From Octopus sinensis (taxonomy: Eukaryota), in NCBI RefSeq assembly GCF_006345805.1, contig NC_043011.1, positions 63,376,464 through 63,440,463 on the forward strand: a DNA stretch of 64,000 nt, written 5' to 3'. A program made the position numbers and the translations under genes. Numbering within the stretch: the stretch's first letter is position 1; the number at the start of each line of letters is the position of its first letter. Under the pieces are notes generated by a model. It did no database searches, was not told where the DNA came from, and saw only the letters and a list, made by a program, of their open reading frames with translations. Of the stretch, positions 2,260 to 63,996 are shown piece by piece.

Positions 2260-2296
2260 CTACAAAGAGTAGACATACGAGGAATAAAATTTTCAT
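2260..2296 (-). CDS. Six-Cys secreted protein family, paralog P1 exon 1 (signal peptide MKILFLVCLLFV); remaining exons not found in window
   Basis: ATG at 2296, 37 nt, phase-1 donor G|GTAAGT; same length and phase as three other copies. Confidence 0.8.
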
Positions 2297-4536: not shown

Positions 4537-4929
4537 ACATTAAAATTTCAATGATTACCGAATGTTAAACTGCTTCCAGCAGCTTCAGTTTTCAGGTATT
4601 CTTGCTGAAACGAAAATTTGATATATTAGGATTCATATTAATACCCCCTATTTCAAGTTCATCTTACCTCCAACAACACTATTATGTATTCGATATAAGC
4701 TGATTGTATTTATGTGTTAAATGTTTACTACATGATACATTAAATTTCAATAATTACCGAATGTTTAAACTGTTCCAGCAGCTTCAGTTTTCAGTATTCT
4801 TGCTGAAACGAAAATTGATATATTAGGATCTATAATACCCCCTATTTAAGATTCATCTTACCTCCAACAACACTATTATGTATTCGATATAAGCTGATTG
4901 TATTTATGTGTTAAATGTTTACTACATGA
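4537..4929. repeat. 200-bp tandem duplication covering the putative last-exon acceptor of P2
   Basis: 4537-4736 vs 4737-4929, differing mostly by 1-nt indels. Confidence 0.9.
4765..4802 (-). CDS. P2 putative exon 4 (P-RILKTEAAGTV*); the duplicate acceptor at 4604 gives PRIPEN*
   Basis: Acceptor TTCGTTTCAG conserved with P3 (30720); AATAAA on - strand at 4530-4535. Confidence 0.5.
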
Positions 4930-5054: not shown

Positions 5055-5143
5055 GTATGCATTTAGCAGTAAAGCGGTTGTGGAAATAGTGAGCACAGTC
5101 TACCCTCACTTCTAGCAGGCAATCATAATAATAAATCCAACGT
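5055..5143 (-). CDS. P2 exon 3 (RWIYYYDCLLEVRVDCAHYFHNRFTAKCI)
   Basis: Pyrimidine tract plus TTACAG acceptor, GTGAGT donor; 3 Cys conserved with P3 exon 3, with synonymous changes (tgc/tgt, ctg/cta, agg/cgt, gac/gat). Confidence 0.8.
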
Positions 5144-8118: not shown

Positions 8119-8218
8119 ACGCATAGTCTACTGACTATTGGTGATGGATAGTTTGCTCTGGCTTTATTCTTGCAATACCCATAGGCCAGATTTTCACACA
8201 TTTTTCGATTAACAGCAT
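8119..8218 (-). CDS. P2 exon 2 ((D)AVNRKMCENLAYGYCKNKARANYPSPIVSRLC(V))
   Basis: TCTTTTAG acceptor, GTACGT donor, 100 nt, phase 1 to 2; same size and phase as 36851-36950. Confidence 0.85.
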
Positions 8219-21372: not shown

Positions 21373-21409
21373 CTACAAGTAGAATAGAAAGGAAGAATAA
21401 AATTTTCAT
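21373..21409 (-). CDS. P2 exon 1 (signal peptide MKILFFLSILLV)
   Basis: ATG at 21409, 37 nt, G|GTAAGT; phase 1 joins exon 8119-8218 as ...LLVDAVN. Confidence 0.8.
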
Positions 21410-25281: not shown

Positions 25282-27559
25282 AATTATAGAACAACTAATT
25301 GGAACACACTGAGAAAAGTAAACTTGGAGATTAAGGAAATAATGTTTAAATAAGGAATTCAAATGAGAACGCAGCCGCTTAGCCCTAAACAACCTAGATT
25401 CATAGTGAAGGACCACAAACCGAATTTCTACACCAACCCAGCGTTAAGACTCATATGCCCTGCTAGTTCCGATATCGGGACCATCAGTAAGTATATTTTA
25501 GATAAATATATCCCTGGTTTAGTTAATAAGCTGAAGCTTAGCCTCTGGGCTAACTCCTCGCAGGTCATGAAGTGGTTCTCTTCCATCCCTAATAAGAACT
25601 GTACTAGGTTTATTCAGTTTGATATTGCTAGCTTCTACCCCTCGGTTAACCCTAGTGTACTAAATAAGGCCCTGTGGCATGCTCACAACAAGGCAGGCCT
25701 CACTAGAGAAGAAATTGATATTATTTTAGTTGCCAGAAAATCATTTATAAAGTTTGAAAATAAGTTGTGGATTCGTAAAGATACTCCCAACGAATTCGAT
25801 GTGCCTATGAGTAGTTCGGATAGCGCGCAGATAGCCGATTTGGTCGGAATCTATATTCTCTACGAATTATCCGACCAATTCCCGGACATCGCGGGCGGCC
25901 TGTATCGTGACGATTGTCTGTTTTACCTGCAAAACACCACGAACATAATCGTACAGAAAACTAAAAATAGGTTAGCTAGGTTCTTTAATAGAATGGGCAT
26001 GAATATAGTTTTTGATAATGAACTCACTAAGGCTAATTTCCTAGACGTCACACTAAACCTCCATAGTGATTCATACTGCCCTTACCATAAGCCTTCCACT
26101 AATTTAAAGTATGTCAGTGTCTTCTCCAATCATGCCAAAACTGTAACACAATTTGGTTAAAAACATCTCTCTAAGATTGTCTAATTTGTCCGCTAGTGTC
26201 GACATTTTTATGCAGAAAGCGGAATTTTATAACGCCGCACTATCCAAAGCCGGTTATAGGCAGAAGGTAGTATATATTGATCCAGCCCTTCCGATGCCAC
26301 CATTCGGTCATCAGGATAGGGCCGTCTATAATAACATTAATAATTTAAGTAGTGATGGGAGCGGGAGGAGTACTGGAGCAGGTACTTCTGGATTGAATTT
26401 AGGGAACATAGATAATTTACGTTTCGGGGGAGGTCATACTAAACCAAAACCTTTTATTCAACCTAGAATCACCCACCCTAATGTCAGAGCTAGCTCCCCG
26501 ACCCATCACAAAAATAGGAATAAACATATCTGGTTTGTAATTCCCTTTGGTAAGCAGATTAGAACTAATCTTCCCCTCCTGTTTCGCCAAGCCATTGCCA
26601 GTAACTTTCCCAGAAATTCCAAATATTACTCCACGGTTAATTCACATAAAGTTAGGATAGCTTTCTCCAACACAAAAAACCTTTCCCACATAATCGCCTC
26701 CCATAATAATAGGCTGCTTATTAAGACCCTATCACCATTGTCCGGAGTCGCAGCTCCGTCTAATTCCAGTTTAACGCGCAGTAGGAATAATAATAGTAGT
26801 AATAATAATAAAAGAGCCAGTACAGTGACTGGTAATCTCAGTACCAACCAGGGAGTAAATAATAGGATTAACGATAGAAGAAATGGTGATGTTAATAACG
26901 TTAGTAATGGCAATAGGGAGGAGAGCGCAGTTCGGGTCATTAATGTAGAGAGTCCTAATAGCAACTTTAGCAACGTTTCCGACAATAGTAGGTCCACGGA
27001 TACTAGCAATCACAGCGGTCTCAGTCATAGGGAATACACAGGGAATAGTCCGTTAATTAGTATTGATAATGAGGAGTATAATGTAGTAGGCGACCGCAGT
27101 TCTCACAGTCAATATAGTAACAGAAACGCAGTATTAATATCAGAAGCTAATCCCAATAGAATAATGTTCTTGTCTAGTAACTCCAAGATCAGAAATGCCA
27201 TTTACCAATGCAATGTTTACACGGATTCGGATGTCTACTCGTATGTCGGGCCCTCATCGTCAAAATTGGCCTTGAGAATATCGAACCATTTCGCAACTTT
27301 TCGCAACGTTAATAAATACCAAGCTACAGGACTTAGCAAACTTATCTGGCGTTTGAAGAACGCGAATTCAGTTTTTAGGCTGGAATGGTCGATTTTGTCG
27401 GTGGCCCTCCCGTTTGATAGGGGCAGAAGGATGTGTAATATTTGTAACTCTGAGCTTTTCCACATATTGTTCGCCAGAGGCCGTTTGGTAAACGGGCTTT
27501 TACAGACGGCTTTTCGATGTCCCCATTGGCGGCGTCATACTTATCTTACATATAAATGA
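25282..27559 (+). pseudogene. PLE RT plus GIY-YIG ORF, disrupted
   Basis: In-frame TAA at 25351-25353; frameshift near 26150 between track ORFs 25363-26160 and 26153-27559. Confidence 0.85.
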
Positions 27560-29413: not shown

Positions 29414-30707
29414 CATATATATACATATATATATACACACATACTGGATTTTTCTTAGTTTACACTCACAAACATCTTTGGAATCGGGACCATAATTTCC
29501 ATGCAGTAGGACTGTAATTGCAACCGTGTTGTTCAAATGCATATTGTCCCTACGCAATAACATCCGCATATGTTTAAAACATTTCGTATTGCCATCATTT
29601 CATACCTTTCGAGTCTGTCACTAAAAGCCTTCCATGAAATTTTCTTCAGTTTTTCCCACTTTGGTTACATGGTAATTTGCGCCATAAGCGATTCTAGCAG
29701 TATTAATGTGTTGGGCAACATAGTCGTACAGATAGGAGATTGTGGCATTATATCATGCACACTGAAAATATATTCGTAGAATGTTACATAAATAACATCG
29801 ATTTTTTGAGCTTCATATAGAAGTAAAATTTTATGTCAGAGGAAAATATTTGTGAAAGACGTCAACATCATAAATCGGTCAACCTCCAGATATTCTTGAT
29901 TTTAATGCTTTTCACACAAACCTAGGATCTAACAAGTTCACTTTAGGGCTGCAAACAATAACGTCTAGCAATCTCCTTGCATCGACTTTGGAGAAGAAAT
30001 GAAAATTTAATGCAGTCGTTCTTGCTACAAATTTGTTGGCCAACATTTAAAAGATTAACGTTCGATTGTTACTCATTTCGTGACACTTCCACTCCCTTAC
30101 AGCTGAGATAGAATAAGAGGAAAATTTCTTTATATATCATTGATATTATTTAATAATGAGGAAGTTCAATTCTCAGGTTCAGAATATTCGTCACATTTCA
30201 CCAGACCTTGACAAAAATGTGTTGAAAAGTGTGTTTTCAGGAGAGGTATTTTTTGGTCCATTGAAACAAACCTGTAATTAGAAACGTAATATTTAAAAGA
30301 AAAGTAACTGATATCAATGAGCTTTCTCGTATTTGAACCCTCACATCTTGAATATAGTTGTTTGTTTTATTACCGCCCCATATCATTCGCCACTTGAAAA
30401 TAAATACGGGGGCTGCTTTCTTCTACAGAACCCTTAAAAGGGGGTACTTCAGCATGAACGCAGTCCTACGAACGTAACAAGCAAATATGAGAAAGGAACG
30501 CACATCTACATTAGTGTGCTAAATTTGCTGTACAGTTATTAAATATCACTCGCATTTTATATAATTTACTTAGTTTATATCGCAACAAGATTGTATTGGG
30601 AATTCAGCGATGTCATATATACATAATAATCAATGGTAAAATAGAGACATTTATGATAAAATTTCAATAATTACCGAATGTTAAACTCCTTCCATCTGCT
30701 TAATTTT

Positions 30708-30719
30708 TCAACGGACGCG
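30708..30719 (-). CDS. P3 putative exon 4 (RVR*)
   Basis: Conserved TTCGTTTCAG acceptor, phase 0; downstream sequence aligns with the P2 3' region. Confidence 0.5.
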   Translation of the reverse strand, partial: RVR

Positions 30720-31474
30720 CTGAAACGAATATTAGCATTGATATTAATACCCCCTATTCCAAGTTCATTAATTAACTCTAGAGATACTGTTATGAATTAG
30801 ATACAAGTTCATTATTCAAGTATTTACGTGCTAAGTTTCAACTGCCTGATATTATGAAGAATTAATCCAGATTCCTATCTCTATCTTTATCGCGTTTAAA
30901 TTTTGCATGATACTGTTTAGATCGAGATATAATGTAGATTTTTTTTATTGTTTGAGAAATTATAAAAATGGTACAATTGCAAGCGAAATATCGTAAAATG
31001 TGTTGCTTCGAATAGACACAGAAAATATGATCGCTGTTCCCGTATTGCCACTATATCACCGATTAGCTAACGTGTGTGTACCGAGTTAGAAACAAGAATC
31101 AGTACTATACGAGATCTAATTGACCAAACAATATAAGTGTACAGCATTTTGTTGTCGTGTGCAGTTGATTTAATGGAAGGCCAATATTTCAATGATAAAT
31201 ATTTAGGGACAACGGATAGGAATTTTAAAATTCCATGATGCCAGTGGACACTACACGTGTTACTAAGTCCATTATTTCATGGAACCTTTCTCTTGCAACA
31301 ACTAATAACCATATACATTACAAAAGATGACATGTTATGTATTTCAAATATGAACGTCAGTTGAATGAATAAGAAAAGTTAGTACGCTATCGTCTCATTG
31401 ATTTAACTAATGTAAGTGTCATTTATAATTAATTATGCAGAAACAATGTAAATTAAAATAATCAAAATAATTAC

Positions 31475-31565
31475 CAATAAGCATTGGTCAGTAAGCGTTT
31501 TGTGGAACGTGAAAGCACAATCACTACGAATGTCTCTTAGACAAAAATAATAATTAATCAAACGT
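31475..31565 (-). CDS. P3 exon 3 (RLINYYFCLRDIRSDCAFTFHKTLTDQCLL)
   Basis: TCTTTCAG acceptor, GTAATT donor, phase 2 start; Cys spacing identical to P2. Confidence 0.8.
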
Positions 31566-32489
31566 CTGAAAGATAAAGACAAGACGGTTTTCAGTTCGGA
31601 TATAAAATAATCGTTTATTAACATCATTTTCAAGAAATGGTAGAATCTTACTTCTCGGACTACGAAGCCTACCAAATATACGGTTCTTAATTCGGTGTTT
31701 GGCAGAGTGCTTACAAGTTCTTGGATATAAAGCAGTTACTGATTTACATTTAATCGAATTCTCTTGTAACGGAAAAATCATTGGTTTCCGTGCAAATATT
31801 TAATGCTTGGTTTAATGCGTGCAAAGCTGTTGATTTTAAAAAGGGAGACAACATATGGTACATTAGATGAAGTATTTTACAATAATAACTAAAGGCCGTG
31901 ATCTAATAGTAATTAATGATAACTTTACTCATCCCCCCGTAAGGTTTGGTATTTAAACAATTTCGAATGTTCAAAGCCATTACTATATTTAGACGTCCGA
32001 TGATGAGAAGGATTTTCCAACGGATGGAACATATAGATTTACGAACGGTACAGTTAAATTGTTTCACTTATTTATCTGTCAGCATGCTAGGAAAACGCCT
32101 TGTAAATGAAGGAATTGAATTCTGAAAGCCAAACAGAAACGATCGCTTATATTCGCTAGCTGAGTAGATTGGAGCAACGTGAAGATAAAAGATCTTGCTC
32201 AAGGACACCACTCTAAGTCTATGGCATTTTAAACTTTGAGATTAGGAGCCGAGTACACTAACCATTAAACCAAGATCCTTTCAGTGTACAAGTCATTTCG
32301 TAAATAATCATTCCCAATAAGAATCTGATCAAAGTAAAAATACAACCTCAATATAAGGATGATTTAATTGTCTGTCAGCACATTGTGATTTGTTCTGGTA
32401 CCATATGAGTATCAGCCATATGGTGAGAATAAATGACATTTAAAATAGTTCATTTAAAAACATAATTCTTAATAGTAATAATAAACATT

Positions 32490-33050
32490 TTATTTTTGCT
32501 GCGGTGGAAACGGTTTACAAGTAATTGTGTTCGACCCTATGGAAACATTTCGATTGCTTCAAATTAGTGAGCGCTCCCGCCATGCTAGTTTCTTTATCTA
32601 TCCTCTCTATGATGTAGCACGTGAGGCGAACTTTGTCGTGGATAGTAATATTTGGGGTGGTGCATGTCTGCGCTTCACTAACCAACTTATTGTTCATAAG
32701 TGGCAACCTCTTGGCTAACACCGTTTATACTTAGAATCTATATTCAGTAGAGTTATAGATCTAAACTTACCAAGTCTGTCCCGCTTAATCGGACCATTCT
32801 TTAACATCACCACCACTACATGGCTTATAGCACTGGGATTTCACCTATTCTGTTGCCAGTTTTGCTTGTCGTCAGCCAAGAGTATATCCATCAAGTCTGG
32901 CACATGGAAATAAACCTGGAAGGCTAGATCATCGCGCCCCAGAGGCTTCTTTGTTACCCAGCCTGTCGTCGCATCCCACAAGTCGTTATCAGCATTTCGT
33001 AGAATAGCGCATACCTAACTGAGAGGCGCGCCATGCTACTGAGATTCGAG
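32490..33050 (-). mobile_element. L1/Tx1-type RT fragment in P3 intron 2
   Basis: LAKRLPL...EAQTC...GALTNLKQSKCFHRVEH; paralog of 6140-7090. Confidence 0.75.
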
Positions 33051-33094
33051 ATGAAATTTCAAACCTGGTTTCTCATCCCTAAGGTATGATTCGA

Positions 33095-33138
<44 letters not shown>

Positions 33139-33140
<2 letters not shown>

Positions 33141-34455
33141 GAGTGAGAGAGCAGCGCATGCCATCAAAGTGAAACTGGGGTAAAATATACGAAGCCCAAT
33201 ATACCCATCATAACTACCAGTCTGATAAGGGTACACTAGGCACATGCATCACAACCATATGTGCGCGAAATGGTGATCTCATATCAAGATAAACAGCGCA
33301 TGACCTTGCGGGTGGGGCCTAGTTAGAATTTTCTTCTGGTCGAGTAGCCCACCTCGCTCAAAAGGTCACTGGATAAGGGTTGTTTAAGGATGTTGAGCAA
33401 AACACCTATGTTTCCAGAGGTGAATTATCCAAACACCAAAGAATTCCTCACAACACATGGCTATGATGCTCCCCCATTACTTCTGCTCGTGATCAGAGAT
33501 GCACGTATCGTCAGCCACTAAGGGACATGTTCAACTCGTAAAGGTTAAACAACTGACAAGCAAATCTGTGGTATTGAGCAGAATATTTGTTGTAGCCCAT
33601 CTTTTATACCAGCACAAAACAGTGTACATGGTAACACTTCCCAATCAGTAAAGATCAGAAGCCGCGAGAGCTACTGCATGATATTGCATTATTATAATTA
33701 ATATTATTATTATTATTATTATTGATAGAGAGAGCAGTTCATGCCATCAAAGTGACACTGGGGTAAAATATACAAAGCCCAATATACCCATCATGACTAC
33801 TCGTCTGATAAGGGTACACCAGGAACATGCATCACAACCATATTATTATTATTAGTATTATTAATATTCAGTAGTTTTCTTTTATTATTATTATTATTAT
33901 TGAGTGAGAGAGCAGTGCATGCCATCAAAGTGACACTGGGGTAAAATATACGAAGCCCAATATACCCATCATGACTACCCGTCTGATAAAGGTACACCAG
34001 GCACATGCATCACAACCATATGTGCGCGACATGGTGATCTCATATCAAGATAAACAGCACATGACCTTGCAGGTGGGGCCCAGTTAGAATTTTCTTCAGA
34101 TTGAGTAGCCCATCCCGCTCAAACGGTCCCTGAATAAGGGTTGTTTAAGGATGTTGAAAGAACCACCCATGTTTCCAGAGGTGAACTATTCAAACCCCAA
34201 AGAATCCCTCTCAACACATGGCTATGATGCTCCCCCACTACTTCTGCTCGTGATCAGAGATGCACATATTGTCAGCCACGAAGGGACATGCTCAACTGGT
34301 TAAGGTCAAACAACTGACAAGCAAATCTGTGGTATTGAGCAGAATATTTGCTGTAGCCCATCTTTTATACCAAGACAAAACAATGTACATGATAACACTT
34401 CCAATCAGTTAAGATCAGAAGCCATGAGAGCCACTGCCTGGTACTGCATCAGGGC

Positions 34456-34459
<4 letters not shown>
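33139..34459 (-). mobile_element. Three head-to-tail TAA-tailed retroposon copies (33139-33690, 33723-33838 partial, 33900-34459)
   Basis: Repeated TTGAGTGAGAGAGCAG...GGGCATTT unit separated by TTA tracts. Confidence 0.85.
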
Positions 34460-34526
<67 letters not shown>

Positions 34527-34545
34527 TATTATCATTATATTATTA

Positions 34546-34638
<93 letters not shown>

Positions 34639-35052
34639 TTCTGTAGTTTTATTTTTATAGCGTGCTTTCACTTCACTACCGAGCGCAGCTCTGTGTGCCT
34701 TGGGTAAGTGCTGTGATTTGTTGTGATGCTCTGATGTTTATTGTATGGAAAGTGTTCTGCTTAGGTTGTGTGCAGTGCCTAGTAGTGCAATTTTCTGTAT
34801 GTTATATGTGTTTGTAAGTCCTGGTGTTTTTGTTATGTATTTGTCTGAATAATTTTTTATCATGCCTAATGCACCTACTATGATAGGAATTGTTTCTGTT
34901 TTCAGATTCCACATTCTAGTTACCTCTATTTCCAGGTCTTTGTATTTTGAGAGTTTCTCCATTTCTTTTAGAGACACGTTGTCATCTGCCGGTATTGATA
35001 CATCAATTAGAAAGTATTTTTTTCTTCATGATCTCTGACAACTATATCTGGT
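34639..35052 (-). mobile_element. R4 family B 3' fragment
   Basis: KEMEKLSKYKDLEIEVTRMWNLK. Confidence 0.88.
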
Positions 35053-35056
35053 TACT

Positions 35057-35131
<75 letters not shown>

Positions 35132-35147
35132 GTTGTTGTTGTTATTA

Positions 35148-35230
<83 letters not shown>

Positions 35231-35232
<2 letters not shown>

Positions 35233-36640
35233 GTGGCTGCATCAATGGTTACTTCAGATATTGTTGGGTAGAAATAAAGAGAAGAAACAGGACGTAAAGA
35301 ACCATACTGGCGGAGACGAATATTTGAGAAGCAAAAACAGTTAAAAAGACATTTCGAATAAGTTGACAGATTGAGAAGAGAGGAATTGGAGTTCCAAAAT
35401 ATAAGAATAATGCTGGCAATTTCTTAGAGAACAAAAGATAAAGGTTACGATGTGATATTGGAGGAACTGAAACAGAGGATTGTTTCAATCAAGACAAAAC
35501 TGGAAATATTTGACAACAGAAATAAATCAGTCAGCGAAAAGAGTTGGACGCAAATAAGATGAAAGTCTTTGAGGAATTAGATGGGAAATGAGACGTAACA
35601 AATATACCTTTTGCAGAGGAAAGGAGGGCATTGTGGAGAAGGATGTGGGACCGAATTGTAGAAGATAAGGATGAAAGGGATTGGTTGTATGAAATGCAAG
35701 ATAGTTTAAGAAATATAGAAGTCCAAGAAGACATAAAGACAACTACAGAAATGATGAATTAACTGTTAATTAATTTCTGAAATTGGAAGATCCCAGGATC
35801 GGATGGTGCCCAAAGGTATTGGGTGAAGGAATTAAGAGGGCTGCATCAAAGATAGCACAATACCTAGATGAGTGCTTGCAGGAAGGCGCAGTACCCAGAT
35901 GAATGACAACGGGAAAGACATTGTCATGTGCTAAGGAGCCTGAAAAAAGAAACTTTGCATCGAACAGTATTCTAATAACATATTTTCCGCTAATTGGAAA
36001 GTAATTTTAGGTACTTTGGCCACATACCTGGAGGAAGTCAGGCCCTTACGCATTGAACAAAAAGAGTGCCGAAAAAATAACCAGGGAGTGAAGGATCAGC
36101 TCTTGATTGATAATCTAATTATCAGGAATTGCGAGAGAAGACATATAAACCTGAGCATGGCATAGGTTGACTATCGCAAAACATAAGATATGGTGCCACA
36201 CTCCTAGATTATAAGAACGATGGAAATGTATGGATTAGCAGAGAATATGAGAAGTCTTATATAGGATATCATGAAATATTAGAAAACTGAATTGATAGCA
36301 GAGAAGCAGTGACCAGGAGATGTGAAAATCAAGACAGGTATCTTCCAGGTGGACATTGTGTGACTTCTGATATTCAGGCCGGGAATGAGACTCTTGAGTG
36401 AAATACCACAGAAAACAATGTTGGGGTGTGATCTGGGAAGGGGTAAGGCAAAGGGAAACCTACTGTTATTCATGGACAACCTGAAGTTCTTCACTGAAGC
36501 AGATCTGGACAGTCTATTCCAGTCTGTGTGGATTTTCCCTAATTACATAAAGATAGAGTGGACTCTCAAAATCTCTTACGATGGTGATGAGATAATGTAT
36601 GCTTACCAGGACACAAGAAATATGGTTGACAATTAGTGAA
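35231..36640 (+). mobile_element. Decayed R4-like RT N-terminal region (family E)
   Basis: EPYWRRRI, EELKQRI and KDQLLID-like remnants; many stops. Confidence 0.7.
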
Positions 36641-36850
36641 ATGATGAAGGTATTTCAACCTCAATCTAGGGGCTTTTTCTGCAAAAACTAGCTCTCAATG
36701 CGGGTACCCAGCTAGTAACAAACAATTAAACAATGAGAACAAAATTTCGACAATTTGAGACTTAGAAATTTCAAAGACCTTCAGGAACTCCAAAACCTGC
36801 GATTTACCGCGAGTAACAACAACAACTACAATAATACTAATAATACGTAC

Positions 36851-36950
36851 AGGCATGTTGCACTAAGTTTTGCGTATGGCGGGATATTTCTATAATTACC
36901 CTTGCAAAAACTACCGGCCAATCTATCGCACTCGGATTGCGCAGCAGCAC
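36851..36950 (-). CDS. P3 exon 2 ((G)AAAQSECDRLAGSFCKGNYRNIPPYAKLSATC(L))
   Basis: TCTTTTAG acceptor, GTACGT donor, 100 nt, phase 1 to 2. Confidence 0.85.
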
Positions 36951-37190
36951 CTAAAAGATTTATTTAATTATTGATAATTAGTGTTACATATACTGGGTGT
37001 ATAATCATTATGTTTAAAAAAGAAAGCAAAAACAAAACAAAAATACGAAAGAGTTAATATAGAGCTAAATTAATATCCCCATGCACTTAGTAGGCAATTA
37101 TGATATGTGTTTCATGGTGGGGGACAAATACAAACCCACAATTATGCACACACCCACATATATAGTGACGACAAGCTTTGTATACACTCA

Positions 37191-37232
<42 letters not shown>

Positions 37233-38769
37233 AGTCACCCTGTATGTGCATACATGTAAACATACATACATAAACAGATGTTCTTACATAAGCATACACA
37301 CACACATTTATAATTGAAAGAGAGTTAGAGGTTGTGAATCCAACCAACAAAGGGATAGTATCTATCCAATATACTGCTGGTAAAATACCCAATTATTTAT
37401 ATACAAGTGTCGGTTATTGCGTGGCAATTACATTTGTGAGAGTAACAAATTGACGAGGGTAAAAAATGGTTTTGCCCTTAATTTATACGACAGGACGAAA
37501 AAGGAGGCTATTCAAAAAGAGCATGCGTCAACTGTTGGACACTATTTTATGTGTATTTATTTATTTTAAACAATTATGAGAAGATATATACATCTATAAA
37601 GATTATGATTTACATATATATAAGTAGCAGTAATTTCTAGAATAGAGACAGAAGAACAGTTTCTTATAGCTGTTGCTGCCGAGAGGTCGCATTACTCCAC
37701 ATGTTATTTACATCTTTTCAGGGTACTGTAGTGATCGGTAAATAAAAGTAGGGTACTTGGGTGTGCTCTAGGTTTCATCGTTATCTAAAGCCTTTTAATT
37801 CGACCCCATGAGACTTAAAATTTCTCAGGTTTCTAACAGATTCGACTATCAATGATAGCCCCTGGGAAATGGGTTCCTTAGGTTAAGGCGATTCCAGTCC
37901 TGGTGTTAGGAGCGATTCTGCATTTCAGCAACACCAAAATGTCTTTGGAAGTAGGACTGCCCAGGAGGCTGATTTCGCCTTGGCGTCTGGCGGGCTTTTC
38001 AAAAGACTTGGAATCGGAGTGGAGTAACACTGGTGAGTACAACTGCGTCTCTTATACACCTTATATATATGAGCATGTGATTGTGTAACTGTGTTATTAG
38101 ATTCATGGGTGTTTATATATGCAAGTTTTTGTTTGATCATAGAAATATGAGTGCCTTTGTTTTATACACAGGCGTCCTTGAACGTGTTTAGTGTGCATGT
38201 ATGGACATGTGTGCTGAAGTCTGTACGTTCTTGAATTTGTGCATAAACATCTGAGTGCATCTTTGTCTCCAGAAGCATATGCCTGCGTGTGTTTTGTCTT
38301 GTGTGATCATATATGTACACATAGACACACACACACACACACACACATGTATATATGGTTTCGGCAGATGAATGTTTAGTGTACATTTTATTCTTAATAT
38401 TCATGAATGTAAATTGTACATTAGGGGTCATATCGACCAAAATTATTAATTACATTTATTGATGTAATCGCCTTTGGCAATCATAATTTCTTTCTTCATT
38501 TTTGAATATATACAAAGATATAATTAAACGCATGAGATGAACTGGATTTGAAACTGGGGAGTGATATTTGAATTCTAGTCAATTATTGTGATAAAAAATT
38601 AGGAATTTTAGAATACACCTTGCTGATACAACCATGATTTCAACTTTTTTTTATTTTTAGATTCTTTTTATTCCGTACACACCATATATAAGTGTTACTT
38701 ATTTTGTTATTGTAATAATGATGGGGGGTTTCGCCGAACATTTGGTGAGATAAAGTTTTATTATTGGTT

Positions 38770-40305
38770 AAAATTACTGTTCTTTGAATTGTTGGTTGTT
38801 TTGTGCTGCGTTGCAGTGGATTTCTGGTTGTGCTTTCTCTCTGTCTTTAAGGAGAGAGCCATGGAAATGGGAAAAAAAGTATGTTTTATTCGGGCTTTAG
38901 TGGTTCCGAATTGTCCTCTTCGGAGGAGGATCTATTACTAGCAGTCGAGAGGATGGGCAATTTCCTAAAGAAGAAAAAGGAGGTAGGTCTATGAAATATT
39001 GAAAAATATGGAAAAACGGCATATAGGGTAGGCGATGACGTCAAGCTATCAGCACACTAGAAGATAATGGAAGAAAAAGACAAGAAGACCGTAGTATAAA
39101 AGTTGTATTCAGTGAAAGAAAAGAAAATAGAACGTGTGGAAACTGAAACTATAGAAAAGGCATTGTGCTTAGTCTGGCAAGACATAACATATCTGGCTAG
39201 AGGAAATAAATTCGGTACTATTATAGTCCATTTAAAGACGGAAGAGAAAGCAAAAGGAACAAGCCATAATCACAGTAAAATTTGGGAAGACAGACGTCCA
39301 GGTTTAGGGTGGAAGGAATCGCACCGAACATAGATGTGTCTTGGGTCACGGCGGCTGTTCTTTGGGGAGGTAAGGAAAAATGGCCGTCCTCCAAGCCTCA
39401 AAAACAGATAACTCGATTTGGATAGGCCAAAATATGGATTTCATTATACAGGCTAAAGTGGAAACACTGGAAAATTTGGTGGAAACGGTATCAGTCAGAG
39501 ATCTAGTGTGGAGAGTGTGGGTGGAGGTAAGAACTCCTCGTTGTTTTAAATGTGGGCCAAAAGGCCACATTAGAGCATGCTGCCATCTACAGAAGCAGAG
39601 AAATCAGGAGAAGGAACAAAAGAAAGAAAAGAAAAATGAAGAAGAGTGGACAGTAGCCAATGGAAGAAAAATGAAGAGGAAGAAGGGAGAGTGTGTAGTA
39701 GAACAGTAGTAGAACAGCCACGCCACCCATACCATCTCCGAACCCCCACCAAACACCAAACCCACCCATTCTCCTCCGACACAAAGTAAAAGGATAAAAG
39801 GAAAACCGACATATAAGGATATACAAAACTCCCCACCCATTGGTAATTGTTACGAATGTATGAATACGGAAGAGGTAGATAATGAATTACTTAACAAGAT
39901 AACAGAATGGAAAAGGGCTAAATGTGTGAATGTTGGAAGTCGGACAAATATAGTCGGATGGCAGAGAAAGCCAAAAGGAAGAAATATGGAAATTGAAGAA
40001 AGGATACAAGTGTTGGAGGGTGATTGCGGATTTAAAAACGACAGCAGACAATGTGAGATGTGGATAGAGAATAGAGAAATACAGTGTAGACATTTTGAAA
40101 GACTCGCAATTCAAAAGATAAAAGGTAGTGATGCTGCTTGAGGTGGGGCAAATGGCACATATTCCTTACCATTTTCATTGTCTCATCCGTATTAACATAC
40201 GTTTAAATTTATTTTCATTTTATTTATTGTTACGTGTTGTGTCCCCAATTTCGTTTGTATTGTCCCCTCTATTTTGACTCCCTGCAGGAAATAAAGAAGC
40301 AAATA
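38770..40305 (+). mobile_element. L1/Tx1 ORF1-like element with zinc knuckle and no ORF2
   Basis: RCFKCGPKGHIRAC (CX2CX4HX4C-like) near 39535; ends AATAAAGAAGC. Confidence 0.55.
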
Positions 40306-40864
40306 ATAATGACGGGTTACCAGAAAAGGGAACTTCACTGATGATGATATATATTTTTGACCGGAGAAATTGGCCGCAGCCGATTTGAGGTTTTAATGTG
40401 TAATGGATTGCGGCATTGACTCTTGAAAGTGCTGGAGACGTCGATTTATGCTTACACTTTTTTGGGACTTGCCAATGGATGTTATTCTGGATTCATATTA
40501 CATTTAATAGTCCGACTATATATTTCATCGCCTTGCTATATACATTCATATTGTCTTCATATATGCATCTCTTCTTCATACAAATTTCTTCATACAAACA
40601 GGTTTCACACGATTTTTTTGTATGTGAAAATATATGGATGATTGATTCTAGTTTCAGCTCACGAGCTGTGGCCATGCTGGGGCACCGACATTATATATCT
40701 TTATATCTTCGTGATTTGGGTGCAGTATCTGAACTTGTATTTATATTCTACAGCGTGACGATATGGGTTAGATTTGAAGTTGTTTCACCAATTATGTTTA
40801 TTAAGTTTAACAAAAAGTTACATATATATATATATATATAAATATATACATAAATATGCATATA

Positions 40865-41004
40865 CTTTATTTAAAGCAGCAGAAAATTCAACAAAACCTG
40901 TTACTCTGAGTTTCCCGTCGCCGTTCATCGGACAGTTTTTGCTAGAATTGAACCGATATGTCAATTCTATCCAGACTAGTATAAACGCTGCACCTTTGAA
41001 AATA
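40865..41004 (-). repeat. 140-bp repeat with hammerhead-like motif (40898-40935)
   Basis: Inverted copy at 43829-43967; CTGT-CCGATGA-ACGGCGACGG-GAAAC-TCAGA-GTA-ACAG. Confidence 0.6.
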
Positions 41005-41989
41005 TATATTGATATATATATATATATAAATTATAAAAATTATAAAATTCGAGGAAAAACCTTACATTGAATAAAATACATATTGTCATTAATGAAGGAA
41101 ATATAATTAATACATGGAAATTGAAATTAAAATGTTAAAATGCATTAAAATATTACACGGCAGTCATTATTCATATTAAACTATACATATATACATCAAC
41201 ATACACAGATAGATGCGTGCAAACCACATACATATACAGACGTATAAATATAAAGCTAAAATATACACACAAATGCATGTATACATATGCATACGCAATC
41301 TAGTTCGCACGCAAGCTAAAATCATGGATGGAGAAGTGGCGTTCTTTTTTACGATGCAAAGTTGAAGACATGAGTAAGGGGGGGGGGGCGTAAAGTTACA
41401 TGACTCGATACAAGTATCGGATAGGTAGAGAAAAAACGAAAGAAAGGAAGAGAGAGAAAAAGAAAAAGGGAGAAGGAAAAAAAGAAAAATAGGAGGGGGA
41501 AACGAAAGGAGAAAAATTATGTATACAAACAGTGTAACCACGTATACTGACATATATATATAGAGACAAGTATGCAAACACACAAGTTCAAGTGGATACA
41601 TACACATACAATCGTGTATGTGTGTGCTTAAGTACAAACATACGCTCACTTAGACATATACAGAGACGTATCCTTACAAATACATATTCGTGGCCATACA
41701 CATATTTACATCAAAATGCCTAGTTTTTGTCAACCTTACTTATTAAAAAATGGTGAGTGTAATAATAAAAATTATACGAAAGACATGTAAAATATAACAC
41801 CCCATTTCGGATCATCTATAAATTAAAAATCAAAGTAACCAATATAATATAATATAATAACATGAAATAAACTAAGCCGAAGGTTTTTCGTAAGGAATAT
41901 GTAGAAATATAAACAAAATAAACAAAATATATGCACGAGACTTTGCTATACGGAATGAAATCTGCATAGTGCGAAACAAATACATACTA

Positions 41990-43402
41990 ACCCAAGAATC
42001 AAAAATCAAAACTTCAAAAATCAAAAATACAAAAAGACAAAATATACTCTATCCATATGGTATATTTATGTTTGACATTTTAAATTCGGTTGCGTGCCTG
42101 CATAAGTTCATCAGCTCACTTCTTTGATTCAAAGAATTATTGTCTTTGAATAAAATATAAAGTTTCTGTGACAGGCAAAGATTGCATTTAAAATTATTCT
42201 TGTGTGCTCCATGTCTGTATGGTACCGCTCTGTCCAGAATGCTCCATGTCACGTTGAGAGGTGGAGTTTCCTTTTCTTTTAATTCCCAGGCATATTTTGC
42301 TAGGCTGGTCCTCTTTCTATTTTCTGGGTATCTAAATGAATTTCTATGCGAATAAAATCGCGTTTTAAATGCATTTTCTGAAGCACCTGTATATGTCTTG
42401 TATTCCGATGAGCCTTCTATTTGTATCTTGGCTCTATAAACTACCCTTTAACTAGACATTTCCCTTCCAACGGACAGGAGGATTCATTTTTGAAATTGCA
42501 TTTCTTAATGGGCTCGGCACCATGCTTAATATCAATCAGATTCCTATTATGCTGGCTAATGTAAGAGGCAAAATTTCTGCAACAAGAATAGCTAACCTTC
42601 AGAGTTCTTCTATTAAATATCCTATAGAATTTATGGTCCTGCTTAAAATGCCTAGAGACTAATTTCAAAAATTCCTTACCTATATTAGTCTTTACGGCCA
42701 AATTGAAAGCCGAGTTGAACCACAAAACTTTCCTGGTCCTAGTTCTTCGCGCAGCATTATTATCAGCATTAAGCTGGTTCTACTGGATCTTCTCAGAGAA
42801 TCCACTATTCCTTAATGCACTATCGTAATAAGGTGCAGCATTATGGAATGCTGCCTCGTCCGAAGAAATTGAAGATATTCTTCTACCTACATTGCTGACT
42901 AAGTTCCTAAGGATAACTGGCAGATGGTTCGAATATTTGCTAATAGTAATAATAAAGTTTAAACCTATCTGACCTTACATTAAAATTTACATCTAAAAAA
43001 AATCAACACTTTTCAGGTTAGTATCTATTGTAACCCGTAAGCCCATCCTTTGAAAGAAAGCAATAAGGTCCTTCCTAAGTGTATGTGATTCATGGCCGTT
43101 TAAATTATGGGTGGCTATAAGGCCGTCATCTCTATATAAAGCTGCATCTATAAATGGGAATTCTATATTTAAATTATGAAGAATCAAGGCTCCTATGAGC
43201 ATACATAACTCATCCCCATCGTATGCCCCATCGGTACATCGAAAAGAGAATCCTCACTCTTCTTAATCCAGGTTGAATCCTCGAAAAAAAGAAGTGATTT
43301 CCTCGCATGCATGATAATATCAATTTCCGAGCTATCGATGCCGACATACTGCTTGGCGAATTCCAATGCCCTTAGGAGTACCGTCCTAGATATTGACGGG
43401 TA
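41990..43402 (-). mobile_element. Penelope-like element (Naiad-like), main body, frameshifted
   Basis: YPSIS, FDVPMG, YRDDGL, WFNSAFN, CPLEGKC, CNLCLSQK...LNQRSEL...CRH. Confidence 0.9.
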
Positions 43403-43711
43403 GGAAGCAAGGGGAATATCTAACAATCTTAAGATTAGTGATAGGATTGAATATATTTCCCCACGACCAGCTTTTATTACACAAAAAGACCATAAAGCCA
43501 ATTTTAATAGAAACCCCAAATGCAGATTGATAAATCCGGCTAAAACTGAGCAAATTATTAGCAAATATATTTTGGACCGTATTTTATCTAAGTTAGATAG
43601 TGAAGTAGACTTGAGAATTTGGAGGAATAGTAAGTCAGTCATAGAGTGGTTTAAAGGTATTAGCTATAAGAATAATTGCAGTTTTACGGAATTCGATGTT
43701 ATCGACTTTTA
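43403..43711 (+). mobile_element. Inverted 5' RT segment of the same PLE
   Basis: EARGISNNLKISDRIE...QKDHK...CRLINPAK...EFDVIDFY. Confidence 0.9.
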
Positions 43712-43712
43712 T

Positions 43713-43765
<53 letters not shown>

Positions 43766-43828
43766 AGCTCATTTTTGTTTATCGCTCGAAAATTGACCGT
43801 TATTTGTAAAGGGCCAATCAAACAAGTC

Positions 43829-43967
43829 TATTTTCAAAGGTGCAGCGTTTATACTAGTCTGGAAAAATTAACATATCGGTTCAATTCAAGCAAAAACTGT
43901 CCGATGAACGGCAACGGGAACCTCAGAGTAACAGGTTTTGTTGAATTTTCTGCTGCTTTAAATAAAG
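43829..43967 (+). repeat. Second copy of the 140-bp hammerhead-like repeat
   Basis: GAAA core changed to GAAC in this copy. Confidence 0.6.
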
Positions 43968-44031
43968 CACTGGTATTTGAGTACTCATTTTTCCACCTTG
44001 TTTCACATTTATGTGTTTACATCGGTATATA

Positions 44032-44118
<87 letters not shown>

Positions 44119-44847
44119 AAACAATTGCAGCGTGGAAGGTGTTTGTAAGCCATTTAAGAAACACACAAATGCCGTTCGATTCACTTCAACATTTAAGTTT
44201 AATTTGTCAAAATATTTTCGTCGTTTTAAGACCGCGACCTGTTCACTGACAAAAATCCGTGCTCTATCTGAGAAAGTAACAGTTAGGTCGGTATATATAT
44301 TTACATATGTATGTGTGTATGTATGTATGCACGCATGTATGCATGTATGTATGTATGTACGTACGTACGCATGTGTTTATGTATGTATGTATGCATGTGT
44401 GTAGATGCACACACACACACACTGTAAACTTAAAGCTATAAACCTGCAGTGGTGGATAGGTGTAGACTGACCACTCATCACAACAATATCAAATTTGAAC
44501 CTCCCCCCGCCGAAACTAGGAAGTGATTTACGACCCTTACCCCCACAGCAAAACTCTAAATCTTATTATCAGCCACTTCTTTCTATATTTCAAAACCTTT
44601 TGTTTTAATATTACCTATCTTTTTCCACCTTACATCCAGTTAGTTCAAGTTATATATATATATACGTATGTATATGTGTGTGTTTGCATGTATGTGTGTA
44701 TACACGTACGTACGCATGTGCGTATGTATGTATATTTGTATTTGTGTGTTTCTTAAATGGCTTACAAACACCTTCCACAATGCAATTGTTTTCGTTTCAG
44801 CACACACGATCTCAGATCAAATCACTTGCTATGCAAGTACATCTCCG

Positions 44848-44943
<96 letters not shown>

Positions 44944-45071
44944 GTATGTATATATGAAACTTCAATTCTCTGTATTCATTTAATATATGGATATGGATTC
45001 TGTATTTATACAGCAGATGTAAATGTTATGAAAAACAGAAAAATATATTATCATTTGATATTGCAACTTAC

Positions 45072-45108
45072 CTGCAAAGAGAAGACAAAGGAAGAATAAA
45101 GTTTTCAT
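45072..45108 (-). CDS. P3 exon 1 (signal peptide MKTLFFLCLLFA)
   Basis: ATG at 45108, 37 nt, G|GTAAGT; joins exon 2 as ...FAGAAAQSEC. Confidence 0.82.
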
Positions 45109-45633
45109 GCCTATTCTTTTATGCATTATAATTAACGGATGGTGCTTGGGCAATCAACAATATTATATTGTTACATGTAATGATATACAGTATAACATAT
45201 GCCAGGCACCAGTAAAACAAAACAGCGCAATTCAATTAAGCCTGTCATGTCAAATTACAAAGAGGCAATATTTCTTTCGCATAAATGTGTCATAGTGGAA
45301 TAGCAATTTATAAGTGGATACATAAACAAAAACTTACAGTTGAACATTTATTTCTCTCTTTAGAACAGTATATGACCTATAGTCTATAAACTGAATCTTA
45401 AAAAACTTTGTAGAATGTTTATTCCGGATTTTTTCATTCACTTTCATATTGCTGTGCAACCATGCTGGGGAACCGTAAGGAAGGATTTACTAAACAAACC
45501 GATCGCAATACTTACATTTTAAGACTTGTACTGAGTCTATTGTCATGTCAAATATATACCATATTTTTTCAAATCTGTTGCCGATCAAAATTATAATAGT
45601 TAAAATGAAGAAGTCAATGCCTGTTAGAAACAA

Positions 45634-45635
<2 letters not shown>
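45109..45635 (-). promoter_or_regulatory. Conserved upstream block of P3
   Basis: TATAATA at 45167-45161, 59 nt upstream of ATG. Confidence 0.65.
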
Positions 45636-45711
<76 letters not shown>

Positions 45712-47130: not shown

Positions 47131-47655
47131 AAATTCTACCACAAATTTAGATGCCTAAAGGACCATACAGTACAATAACCTTAACATTATACATTTTAAC
47201 TCCTAATCCCTTTCTAATAACTCTTTCATACAAGAATATCACAACCATTTAATTATATTCGTGTGTATATGCGTGCATACATATATGCGTCAGTGTCTAT
47301 ATGTCTGTAATACTAATTGAATTTATCATTTCCTTATTAAATTAAATTGCACACAACACACACTCACATGCATATGCACGTATGTATGTACGCATGTATT
47401 CATGTAAGTATGTATGCGAGGTATATGTACCTGCGTGTGCAGGGGGATACCACATAGAGTTACACGTACGTAAGGGTGTGCGTGTGTTCATATGCATGTG
47501 AGTGCGTGTTCTGTGGAATTTAATTTAATAATGAAATGATAAATTAAATTACAAATTCCCATTTGCTTGCCAGACGGTCAAACCGACCATAAAAATTGGT
47601 TTTGGTATTGGATAAATTTTGTTGAAAAACAAAAGTAAAAACTATGCACCAATAA

Positions 47656-48360
<705 letters not shown>

Positions 48361-49379: not shown

Positions 49380-49805
49380 AATATGACAAAATTATAAACA
49401 TCTTCACCTTTCAAAACGTTTTTGGTGAAAATTAACCAAATAATTGTTCCACATCGTCACATGTGAAGTTATAAGGAAGCAGAAAGACACTCCTATCATT
49501 CATGAACACTTATTATAATTGCCTACAGAAAGCATGGGAATCCGAATGCAGTTTCGTTCTTTTTGTTTTACTTTTCGCTCTTTTTTAAACGCAACGATTG
49601 TACACACTGTACATGAATCACGAATTATTAACAAATAATTAAAAACAATTAGATACTGCTAATTTTTAAATTTTGTTACAAGCTCGCGACAATTATAGAG
49701 ACCTACGTTTTGTTGAAAATAACCCCAGTTTGGGCGCTAAATAACCTCATTTTTCTATATATTTACACTGAAATTTTTGGAAGATTAAAAAAGGTACAAC
49801 AATGA
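49380..49805 (+). pseudogene. Inverted relic P4 of the six-Cys family; exon 2 largely deleted
   Basis: 49380-49652 matches the intron 1 end of P2/P3; AG|ATACTGCTAAT at 49653 then jumps into intron-2-like sequence (cf. 7310-7445). Confidence 0.65.
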
Positions 49806-50892: not shown

Positions 50893-50898
50893 AATAAA

Positions 50899-50945
<47 letters not shown>

Positions 50946-63959: not shown

Positions 63960-63996
63960 ATGAAAATTTTATTACTCCTTGGCCTTCTCCTTGCAA
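63960..63996 (+). CDS. P5 exon 1 (signal peptide MKILLLLGLLLA); gene continues beyond the window
   Basis: ATG at 63960, 37 nt, A|GTAA donor at the window end. Confidence 0.78.

What the first reader, a model, noticed from the sequence alone, without database searches (positions are those of the whole stretch)
30708..45108. Gene model P3: 79-aa protein, mature peptide probably starting at Gln
join(45108-45072, 36950-36851, 31565-31475, 30719-30708) gives MKTLFFLCLLFAGAAAQSECDRLAGSFCKGNYRNIPPYAKLSATCLRLINYYFCLRDIRSDCAFTFHKTLTDQCLLRVR*. The GAAA|Q site fits the A-x-A signal peptidase rule. An N-terminal Gln can cyclise to pyroglutamate, which is common in secreted bioactive peptides (inference here).
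Basis: partly seen in the sequence, partly recalled or inferred. Interest (0 to 1): 0.8.

Follow-up and report, generated by a model that had tools for sequence, protein, structure and literature searches.

The report
Secreted cysteine-rich peptide gene family
The proposed four-exon gene is really there and is one copy of a local family of small secreted, disulfide-bonded peptides whose peptide-coding exons change faster than their introns, a pattern typical of defence, venom or mating peptides, but its function and expression are untested.

Summary

It is more than chance. A paralogue 24 kb away (P2) keeps the same exon 1, the same 100-nt exon 2, the same splice sites and all six cysteines without a gap. 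Two further 5' ends (P1, P4) and one relic lie in the window.

The roughly 16-18 kb gene unit was duplicated. Non-coding DNA is 77% identical between P3 and P2. Exons 2 and 3 are only 55% and 64% identical (Fisher p = 1.5e-7, dN/dS about 0.9). So the mature-peptide exons evolve faster than the introns.

The product is an N-terminal signal peptide followed by a cationic domain of about 63 aa (pI 9.1) with the framework C-x7-C-x16-C-x8-C-x7-C-x11-C.

No homologue was found in Pfam, the PDB, 5.8 billion proteins, a 1.84-billion-protein HMMER scan of exon 3 only, or metagenomes. The source species seems absent from those collections, so "orphan" is provisional.

Cleavage before Gln17 is one of three near-equal sites. 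The Gln is not conserved in P2, so pyroglutamate is not a family feature. The short last exon is the weakest part of the model.

Verdict: a real, probably unannotated gene for a secreted cysteine-rich effector. It is a new member of a familiar kind and of moderate interest.

The parts
45109..45646 (-). P3 5' flank / putative promoter, shared by four gene copies
   Evidence: About 75-80% identical to 21410-21937, 2297-2783 and, inverted, 63481-63959. Pairwise identity is 77-84% over the 222 nt before the ATG.
45072..45108 (-). P3 exon 1: ATG plus 12 codons and 1 nt (MKTLFFLCLLFA, G split). This is the n- and h-regions of the signal peptide. Donor is CAG|GTAAGT and the intron is phase 1.
   Evidence: Homologous exon 1 copies lie at 21373-21409, 2260-2296 and 63960-63996.
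36951..45071 (-). P3 intron 1 (8.1 kb), with simple repeats and transposon fragments
   Evidence: The last 170 nt are 88.5% identical to the P2 intron.
36851..36950 (-). P3 exon 2 (100 nt): the end of the signal peptide, the cleavage region AGAAA|Q, and Cys1-Cys3 of the mature peptide. The following intron is phase 2.
   Evidence: The P2 exon 2 is also 100 nt with the same TTTTAG acceptor and GTACGT donor, but is only 55% identical. blastn homology stops at the exon start and resumes just past its end.
31566..36850 (-). P3 intron 2 (5.3 kb). It holds two copies of a ~0.5-kb interspersed repeat (33097-33611, 33841-34375).
31475..31565 (-). P3 exon 3 (91 nt): Cys4-Cys6 of the mature peptide. Donor is TTG|GTAATT and the following intron is phase 0.
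   Evidence: The P2 counterpart 5055-5143 is 64% identical in nucleotides and 48% in amino acids, with all three Cys aligned.
30708..30719 (-). P3 exon 4, coding part (RVR plus TGA). The 3' UTR continues downstream. A conserved GTAAT lies 47 nt after the stop, and the first AATAAA lies 348 nt after the exon start.
   Evidence: The TTCGTTTCAG acceptor is conserved in P2. The tail sequence and reading phase are not.
30000..30707 (-). P3 3' UTR and flank, homologous to the P2 3' flank
   Evidence: 70.6% identical to 3851-4737.
21373..21409 (-). Paralogue P2 exon 1 (MKILFFLSILLV)
8119..8218 (-). Paralogue P2 exon 2 (100 nt)
5055..5143 (-). Paralogue P2 exon 3 (89 nt, donor TAC|GTGAGT, phase 1)
4765..4802 (-). 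Paralogue P2 exon 4, coding part (tail PRILKTEAAGTV*). A second copy of the acceptor lies at 4604, because a 194-bp unit at 4536-4929 is tandemly doubled.
2260..2296 (-). Paralogue P1 exon 1 (MKILFLVCLLFV). The rest of the gene lies beyond the left end of the window.
63960..63996 (+). Paralogue P4 exon 1 (MKILLLLGLLLA), inverted relative to P3. The rest lies beyond the right end of the window.
49501..49660 (+). Relic of the end of intron 1 plus the first ~15 nt of exon 2, inverted, with no open frame after it

Best explanation
P3 is a genuine, intact gene of an animal genome, probably an invertebrate. It encodes a 79-aa precursor made of a 14-16-residue signal peptide and a cationic peptide of about 63 aa and 7.4 kDa with six cysteines. 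It belongs to a local family of at least four copies, made by duplicating a roughly 16-18 kb gene unit in both orientations.

Inferred mechanism. The precursor enters the ER. Signal peptidase cuts within AGAAA|Q. The domain folds with three disulfides. P3 has no dibasic processing site, so the whole post-signal region is the product, and it is secreted.

Exons 2 and 3 have diverged more than the surrounding introns, at replacement and silent sites alike, while the cysteines, frame and splice sites are kept. The peptide surface is therefore being diversified on a fixed disulfide scaffold. I take it to be an extracellular effector aimed at a fast-changing target, most likely host defence (antimicrobial) or a toxin-like offence or defence peptide.

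Shown here: exon structure, paralogy, the divergence contrast and the sequence features. Inferred: secretion, disulfide pairing, cleavage site and biological role.
For: Exact ORF and canonical splice sites. Paralogue P2 has the same exon sizes and sites and six aligned Cys at 41% amino-acid identity. Colinear homology runs along the whole gene unit. Four copies share the promoter and exon 1. Non-coding DNA is 2798/3631 = 77.1% identical against 112/189 = 59.3% for exons 2+3 (Fisher p = 1.5e-7). Both exons fall below 39 of 40 non-coding windows. For the mature region dN = 0.56, dS = 0.64 and the ratio is 0.87. The p-distances are pN 0.39 and pS 0.43 against 0.23 for introns. The N-terminus is hydrophobic, and mature P3 has pI 9.1 and charge +4.8, while P2 has +6.8. 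Known families show the same signature: a conserved signal and introns with a hypervariable cysteine scaffold. Examples are conotoxin genes (PMC3862624) and mussel MgCRP-I (PMC4558851).
Against: There are no expression data of any kind. No homologue of known function exists and no structure prediction was possible, because the tool refuses spliced sequences. The divergence contrast rests on a single paralogue pair and 189 coding sites. dN/dS is about 1, not above 1, so positive selection is inferred only from comparison with the introns. The C-terminal tail and the signal cleavage site differ between P3 and P2. Choosing defence or toxin over signalling is a prior, not a result.
Confidence: 0.6

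Rival explanations
1. Same gene and same secreted three-disulfide peptide, but it is an intraspecific signal: a pheromone, a gamete-recognition or seminal protein, or a peptide hormone. Reproductive proteins also evolve fast in tandem families.
For: Rapid divergence on a fixed Cys scaffold fits reproductive or pheromone proteins equally well. The size of about 60 aa with three disulfides and a possible N-terminal Gln resembles some peptide hormones and water-borne pheromones (own knowledge).
Against: Nothing specific points this way. There is no amidation signal or dibasic processing site in P3. The Cys spacing does not fit the crustacean hyperglycaemic hormone family, eclosion hormone or insulin-like peptides as I recall their patterns, and Pfam gives nothing. 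Hormones are usually conserved rather than hypervariable.
Confidence: 0.2
2. Exons 1-3 are right but the 3' end of the model is wrong. The transcript may end differently, for example by read-through of the exon 3 donor giving ...CLLVIILIILIYIVSA*. Alternatively exon 4 may be an internal exon followed by a further UTR exon, or it may be skipped.
For: The tail is not conserved: RVR* in P3 against PRILKTEAAGTV* in P2, read in a different phase. A conserved GTAAT follows 47 nt after the stop in P3 and in both P2 copies. No AATAAA occurs within 340 nt in P3. The coding part of exon 4 is only 12 nt.
Against: The TTCGTTTCAG acceptor and the TGA are aligned between P3 and P2. About 900 nt of 3' flank is colinear. 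The read-through tails are not conserved either.
Confidence: 0.25
3. P3 is a silent or decaying duplicate (pseudogene or never-expressed copy) in a repeat-rich region, and its open frame is a leftover.
For: The region is crowded with retrotransposon fragments and about 10% simple repeats. One family relic without an ORF exists at 49501-49660. No matching protein is present in large public protein sets.
Against: After about 23% neutral divergence both P3 and P2 keep the ATG, all splice sites, an open frame and six Cys. The exons have diverged more than the introns, not equally as neutrality predicts. The source species itself seems missing from the collections, so absence there says little.
Confidence: 0.1
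4. The peptide is a fragment or derivative of a transferrin-like protein.
For: phmmer against the PDB lists only ovotransferrin. The whole-sequence E-value is 0.025, with YYFCLRDIRSDCAFTFHKTLTD aligned to [22 protein letters not shown]. The two-sequence profile gives E = 0.5.
Against: Each matched stretch scores under 6 bits (i-Evalue above 200). Two of the stretches use overlapping parts of P3, so they cannot both be homologous. Only ovotransferrin entries appear, and there is no Pfam Transferrin hit.
Confidence: 0.03

Closest known systems
Conotoxin gene superfamilies of cone snails (PMC3862624)
   Same: A short precursor with a conserved signal-peptide exon. Long introns (over 3 kb) rich in simple repeats. 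Intron 1 is phase 1 and intron 2 is phase 2. Introns are conserved while the cysteine-scaffold mature region is hypervariable. The genes form multigene families (one search compared).
   Different: No sequence similarity. P3 has no pro-region or dibasic cleavage site. The mature domain is longer (~63 aa), has long inter-cysteine loops, and is split over two exons plus a tiny last exon. Window GC is 35%, against about 42% reported for Conus introns. Venom-duct expression is unknown.
MgCRP-I cysteine-rich peptides of the mussel Mytilus galloprovincialis (PMC4558851)
   Same: A lineage-restricted family of short secreted peptides. The signal is conserved and the mature part is hypervariable around six invariant Cys. 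The genes have four exons, with a phase-1 intron after the signal exon, then an exon of about 100 nt, then a phase-2 intron. The authors infer gene duplication plus positive selection.
   Different: The MgCRP-I framework is C(X3-6)C(X1-7)CC(X3-4)C(X3-5)C, with an adjacent CC pair and all Cys in the last exon, plus a pro-region ending in KR. P3 has C-x7-C-x16-C-x8-C-x7-C-x11-C with three Cys in each of two exons, and no pro-region.
Accelerated evolution of snake-venom phospholipase A2 and three-finger toxin genes (own knowledge, not checked here)
   Same: Protein-coding exons diverge faster than introns and UTRs between tandem paralogues, with dN/dS near or above 1.
   Different: Unrelated proteins and unrelated taxa. 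Those are proven venom components, and P3 has no functional data.
Taxonomically restricted antimicrobial peptide families of invertebrates, for example Hydra arminins and periculins or mussel myticins (own knowledge)
   Same: Small cationic secreted peptides, orphan sequences and tandem families.
   Different: Different cysteine patterns or no cysteines. No similarity was detected. Antimicrobial activity of P3 is untested.

Membership tests
Secretory precursor with a cleavable N-terminal signal peptide | A positively charged n-region, a hydrophobic h-region of 7-15 residues, and a c-region with small residues at -3 and -1 | tested here: met
   M-K, then TLFFLCLLF (9-residue Kyte-Doolittle mean up to 3.1), then AGAAA|Q. 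The same design is seen in P1, P2 and P4 exon 1. This is a rule-of-thumb test only, as no SignalP-type predictor was available. Three adjacent sites satisfy the -3/-1 rule.
Hypervariable cysteine-scaffold peptide gene families (conotoxin-like mode of evolution) | Signal exon and introns conserved, mature-peptide exons diverged more than the introns, cysteines invariant | tested here: met
   Exon 1 is 84% identical, introns and flanks 77%, exon 2 55% and exon 3 64%. All six Cys are aligned. Fisher p = 1.5e-7.
Conotoxin superfamilies (membership proper) | Signal sequence assignable to a named superfamily, a pro-region with a basic cleavage site, a known cysteine framework, and venom-duct expression | tested here: not met
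   No protein or profile hit anywhere. P3 has no pro-region or dibasic site. The loop lengths are far longer than framework IX as I recall it. Expression is not testable here.
MgCRP-I (Mytilus) | Cysteine array C(X3-6)C(X1-7)CC(X3-4)C(X3-5)C and a pro-region ending in KR or RR | tested here: not met
   P3 has no adjacent CC, its loops are 7, 16, 8, 7 and 11 residues, and it has no KR or RR (one search compared).
Crustacean hyperglycaemic hormone / moult-inhibiting hormone / ion-transport peptide family (Pfam Crust_neurohorm) | Six Cys at fixed spacing (about C-x15-C-x2-C-x12-C-x3-C-x8-C, from memory) and a match to the Pfam model | tested here: not met
   Pfam at E <= 10 gives no such hit for P3, mature P3 or P2. 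The spacing differs.
Transferrin-like domain | A significant match to transferrin lobe sequences or the Pfam Transferrin model | tested here: not met
   Only sub-threshold ovotransferrin stretches (under 6 bits each), which overlap one another in P3. No Pfam hit.
N-terminal pyroglutamyl peptides | The mature N-terminus is Gln or Glu and is cyclised | not testable with these tools
   Gln17 is N-terminal only if cleavage is at A16|Q17. Paralogue P2 has Arg at that column. Mass spectrometry or Edman blockage is needed.
Any structurally defined disulfide-rich fold | A confident 3-D model matching a known fold | not testable with these tools
   Structure prediction refuses spliced sequences, and I did not work around that. 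Sequence-only PDB searches gave nothing significant.

The most novel reading that the evidence does not exclude
The family defines a previously undescribed cysteine framework and fold. The framework is C-x7-C-x16-C-x8-C-x7-C-x11-C, possibly a 'twin C-x7-C' helical hairpin clamped by disulfides, with half the scaffold in each of two independently hypervariable exons. On this reading it is a lineage-specific arsenal of bioactive peptides (antimicrobial or neuroactive) evolving by exon-focused accelerated substitution, in which even silent sites outrun the introns.
Probability: 0.3. Interest if true: 0.55.

Novelty: new member of a known kind. Interest (0 to 1): 0.35.

Why it matters
If expressed, this is an unannotated, lineage-restricted family of secreted disulfide-rich peptides carrying the evolutionary signature of arms-race molecules. 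Such families are the usual source of new antimicrobials, ion-channel ligands and pheromones. Automatic annotation routinely misses them because the exons are tiny (37, 100, 91 and 12 nt) and separated by transposon-filled introns of 0.75-8 kb. The locus also gives a clean within-window example of exons diverging faster than introns. For a specialist this is a familiar pattern rather than a surprise. Its value lies in a candidate peptide scaffold and a better genome annotation, not in a new principle.

Tried and rejected
1. Homology searches, all empty or insignificant:
- Pfam.
- The 5.8-billion protein set, queried with P3 and with a P3+P2 profile.
- PDB, by profile and by single sequence. 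Only ovotransferrin noise came back, and I rejected it because each stretch scores under 6 bits and the stretches overlap.
- HMMER scan of 1.84 billion representatives with the exon 3 profile.
- JGI metagenomes, by an exact promoter/exon 1 pattern and by back-translated motifs.
- Literature full-text search for six peptide strings.

I did not circumvent this.

3. Identifying the organism:
- A retrotransposon ORF finds only relatives at 81% identity or less, in Clytia, Penaeus, corals, a killifish and metagenomes.
- The contigs of two of the closer unnamed hits are unlabelled ENA metagenome assemblies.
- Exact look-ups of four window ORFs found nothing.
- I considered a penaeid shrimp because of 35% GC and about 10% simple repeats. 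That is not supported: penaeids are dominated by (AT)n, (AC)n and (AG)n, whereas this window is dominated by (AAT)n.

4. Internal duplication of the two 3-Cys halves. Both exons start with C-x7-C, but the residues between do not match in either paralogue, so I dropped the idea.

5. Recent gene conversion as the reason introns look conserved. The four promoter copies are all only 77-84% alike and there are no near-identical tracts.

6. Extra exons in the introns. Colinear conserved intron blocks sit at the neutral level of about 75% identity, and no additional exon 2- or exon 3-like sequence was found in them.


Full report
**Observation.** On the minus strand, the four segments 45108-45072, 36950-36851, 31565-31475 and 30719-30708 join to 240 nt.
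- Every junction is canonical: CAG|GTAAGT...TTTTAG|G, CCT|GTACGT...TTTCAG|A, TTG|GTAATT...TTTCAG|C.
- Intron phases are 1, 2 and 0.
- Intron sizes are 8.1 kb, 5.3 kb and 0.75 kb.

**Setting.** The window is clearly eukaryotic and animal-like.
- It has 34.6% GC and a CpG observed/expected ratio of 0.74.
- It contains no tRNA or Rfam hits.
- It holds many fragments of non-LTR retrotransposons, matching the RVT_1 and zf-RVT models.
- By my sum of the arrays, about 10% of it is simple repeats, dominated by (AAT)n.
- A ~0.5-kb interspersed repeat occurs at least seven times.
- I could not name the organism. The best relatives of a retrotransposon ORF are 81% identical or less. The named ones are scattered over Clytia, Penaeus, corals and a killifish. 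Exact look-ups of four window ORFs found nothing.
- A penaeid shrimp origin does not fit the repeat spectrum reported for penaeids (PMC7878876).

**The gene is one of a family.**
- tblastn and blastn of P3 against the window find a second complete copy, P2. Its exons are 21409-21373, 8218-8119, 5143-5055 and 4802-4765.
- Two further promoter-plus-exon-1 copies run off the window ends: P1 at 2296-2260 (minus strand) and P4 at 63960-63996 (plus strand).
- An inverted relic of the intron 1/exon 2 boundary, without an ORF, lies at 49501-49660.
- P3 and P2 share colinear homology blocks from about 540 nt upstream of the ATG to about 700 nt past the stop. A whole gene unit of roughly 16-18 kb was therefore duplicated and later loaded with different transposon insertions.
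- P2 keeps a 37-nt exon 1, a 100-nt exon 2 with the same TTTTAG acceptor and GTACGT donor, and an 89-nt exon 3.
- P2's product is MKILFFLSILLVDAVNRKMCENLAYGYCKNKARANYPSPIVSRLCVRWIYYYDCLLEVRVDCAHYFHNRFTAKCIPRILKTEAAGTV.
- It is 41% identical to P3, with all six cysteines aligned without a gap.

**Weak point of the model.**
- The acceptor of the last exon and the aligned TGA are conserved.
- However, P2 enters that exon in phase 1 rather than phase 0 and ends with a different 12-residue tail.
- P2's last exon lies inside a 194-bp unit that is tandemly doubled.
- A conserved GTAAT 47 nt after the stop could be a further donor.
- The first AATAAA in P3 lies 348 nt after the exon start.
- So the RVR tail and the 3' end remain provisional.

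**Evolutionary signature.** All comparisons are between P3 and P2.

| Region | Identity |
|---|---|
| 300 nt upstream of the ATG | 79% |
| Exon 1 | 84% |
| Intron flanks | 75-88% |
| All aligned non-coding columns | 2798/3631 = 77.1% |
| Exon 2 | 55% |
| Exon 3 | 64% |
| Exons 2+3 | 112/189 = 59.3% |

- The coding versus non-coding contrast gives Fisher p = 1.5e-7.
- Both exons fall below 39 of 40 non-coding 90-column windows.
- blastn homology stops at the start of exon 2 and resumes just past its end.
- Nei-Gojobori estimates for the mature region are dN = 0.56 and dS = 0.64, a ratio of 0.87.
- The p-distances are pN 0.39 and pS 0.43 against 0.23 for introns (z = 3.9 and 2.5).
- The four promoter copies are all 77-84% alike, so recent gene conversion of non-coding DNA is not the cause.
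- A decaying copy would diverge like the introns. Here the mature-peptide exons diverge faster while the frame, splice sites and cysteines are preserved.
- The excess at silent sites is unexplained. It may reflect multi-nucleotide codon changes under selection, or exon-focused mutation as debated for conotoxins. It rests on only about 36 silent sites.

**The protein.**
- The N-terminus has the design of a signal peptide: MK, the hydrophobic core TLFFLCLLF, then AGAAA.
- Cleavage after A16 obeys the -3/-1 rule, but so does cleavage after A14 or A15.
- P2 has Arg at the column of Gln17, and its likely cleavage is VDA|V.
- N-terminal Gln and pyroglutamate are therefore possible for P3 but are not a family trait.
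- Mature P3 (Q17-R79) is 63 aa and 7.37 kDa, with pI 9.1 and net charge about +5. It is aromatic-rich, with no N-glycosylation sequon and no dibasic site.
- Its framework is C-x7-C-x16-C-x8-C-x7-C-x11-C. P2 has the same spacing and a charge of about +7.
- Each of exons 2 and 3 contributes three cysteines and starts with a C-x7-C pair. A helical hairpin pinned by the two C-x7-C pairs is a guess, not a result.

**Homology.** Nothing significant was found. The searches were:
- Pfam.
- The 5.8-billion protein set, with P3 and with a P3+P2 profile.
- The PDB. The only entries are ovotransferrin stretches of under 6 bits each that overlap one another in P3, which I reject.
This search has low power.
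- Two scans of JGI metagenomes.
- A full-text search for peptide strings.

Even the abundant retrotransposon ORFs of this window have no near-identical match. The source species is therefore probably absent from these collections, and "orphan" means "no relative in what could be searched".

**Interpretation.** I conclude that P3 is a real gene for a small secreted, cationic, three-disulfide peptide. It is one of at least four tandem or inverted paralogues, and their mature regions are being diversified on a fixed scaffold. The most likely role is an extracellular effector against a fast-changing target, either antimicrobial defence or a toxin-like function. An intraspecific signal, such as a pheromone or reproductive protein, is the main rival. 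My confidence is:
- about 0.8 that the gene and exons 1-3 are real
- about 0.75 that the product is secreted
- about 0.45 for the defence or toxin role
- about 0.5 for cleavage exactly before Gln17

**Comparison with known systems.**
- The mode of evolution and the gene architecture match conotoxin genes. Those also have a short signal exon, a phase-1 then a phase-2 intron, long repeat-rich introns, and conserved introns around a hypervariable cysteine scaffold (PMC3862624).
- They also match the mussel MgCRP-I family, which has four exons, a phase-1 intron, an exon of about 100 nt and then a phase-2 intron, with six invariant Cys in a hypervariable mature part (PMC4558851).
- Membership of either family fails. 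The cysteine frameworks differ, there is no pro-region, and there is no sequence similarity.
- P3 also differs in having its scaffold split across two hypervariable exons.
- I therefore file it as a new member of a familiar kind: lineage-restricted secreted cysteine-rich peptide families under accelerated evolution.

**Limits.** There are no transcript or proteome data. The selection inference rests on a single paralogue pair. The organism is unknown.

Noticed in passing
window 2260-2783 (-), 21373-21937 (-), 63481-63996 (+): Three further copies of the promoter plus signal-peptide exon of the same family. P1 and P4 continue beyond the window ends. P4 is inverted, head-to-head with P3 across 18.8 kb.
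   Followed up: partly
window 49501-49660 (+): An inverted relic of the last ~150 nt of intron 1 and the first ~15 nt of exon 2. Homology stops there and no open frame follows. It looks like a remnant of a broken family copy.
   Followed up: yes
window 4536-4929: A 194-bp unit is tandemly duplicated (2.0 copies, 94% matches). This doubles the last-exon acceptor and the 3' UTR start of paralogue P2 (acceptors at 4802 and 4604). The two copies differ by a 1-nt indel just before the aligned TGA.
   Followed up: partly
window-wide, e.g. 2813-3047, 7554-7775, 10214-10515, 47655-48367, 50891-51841, 55690-55964: About 10% of the window is simple-sequence repeat, mostly (AAT)n with some (AT)n. This is unusually high for an animal genome. 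The motif spectrum does not match that reported for penaeid shrimps.
   Followed up: partly
window 7775-8102, 14625-15095, 15349-15882, 33097-33611, 33841-34375, 54564-55057, 55113-55607: A ~0.5-kb interspersed repeat occurs in at least seven copies, 79-98% identical, often next to trinucleotide repeats. One young copy (96%) sits 16 nt downstream of the P2 exon 2 donor. It is probably a SINE- or MITE-like element.
   Followed up: partly
window 25363-27559 (+) and 43193-43642 (-): Two adjoining long ORFs (265 and 468 aa) have no Pfam match. A shorter related ORF fragment lies inside P3 intron 1. They are probably an unclassified transposable element, possibly Penelope-like, but that is a guess.
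   Followed up: no
window 13258-13812, 16547-20268, 52282-52926, 54175-54561, 56355-59958, 61347-61847: Several degraded copies of one non-LTR retrotransposon family (RVT_1 and zf-RVT) are present. The closest public relatives are only 56-81% identical and are spread over cnidarians, a shrimp and a fish.
   Followed up: partly
P3 versus P2 exons 2-3 (36851-36950 and 31475-31565 against 8119-8218 and 5055-5143): Silent-site divergence (pS 0.43) also exceeds intron divergence (0.23, z about 2.5). The excess exon divergence is therefore not explained by amino-acid selection alone.
   Followed up: partly
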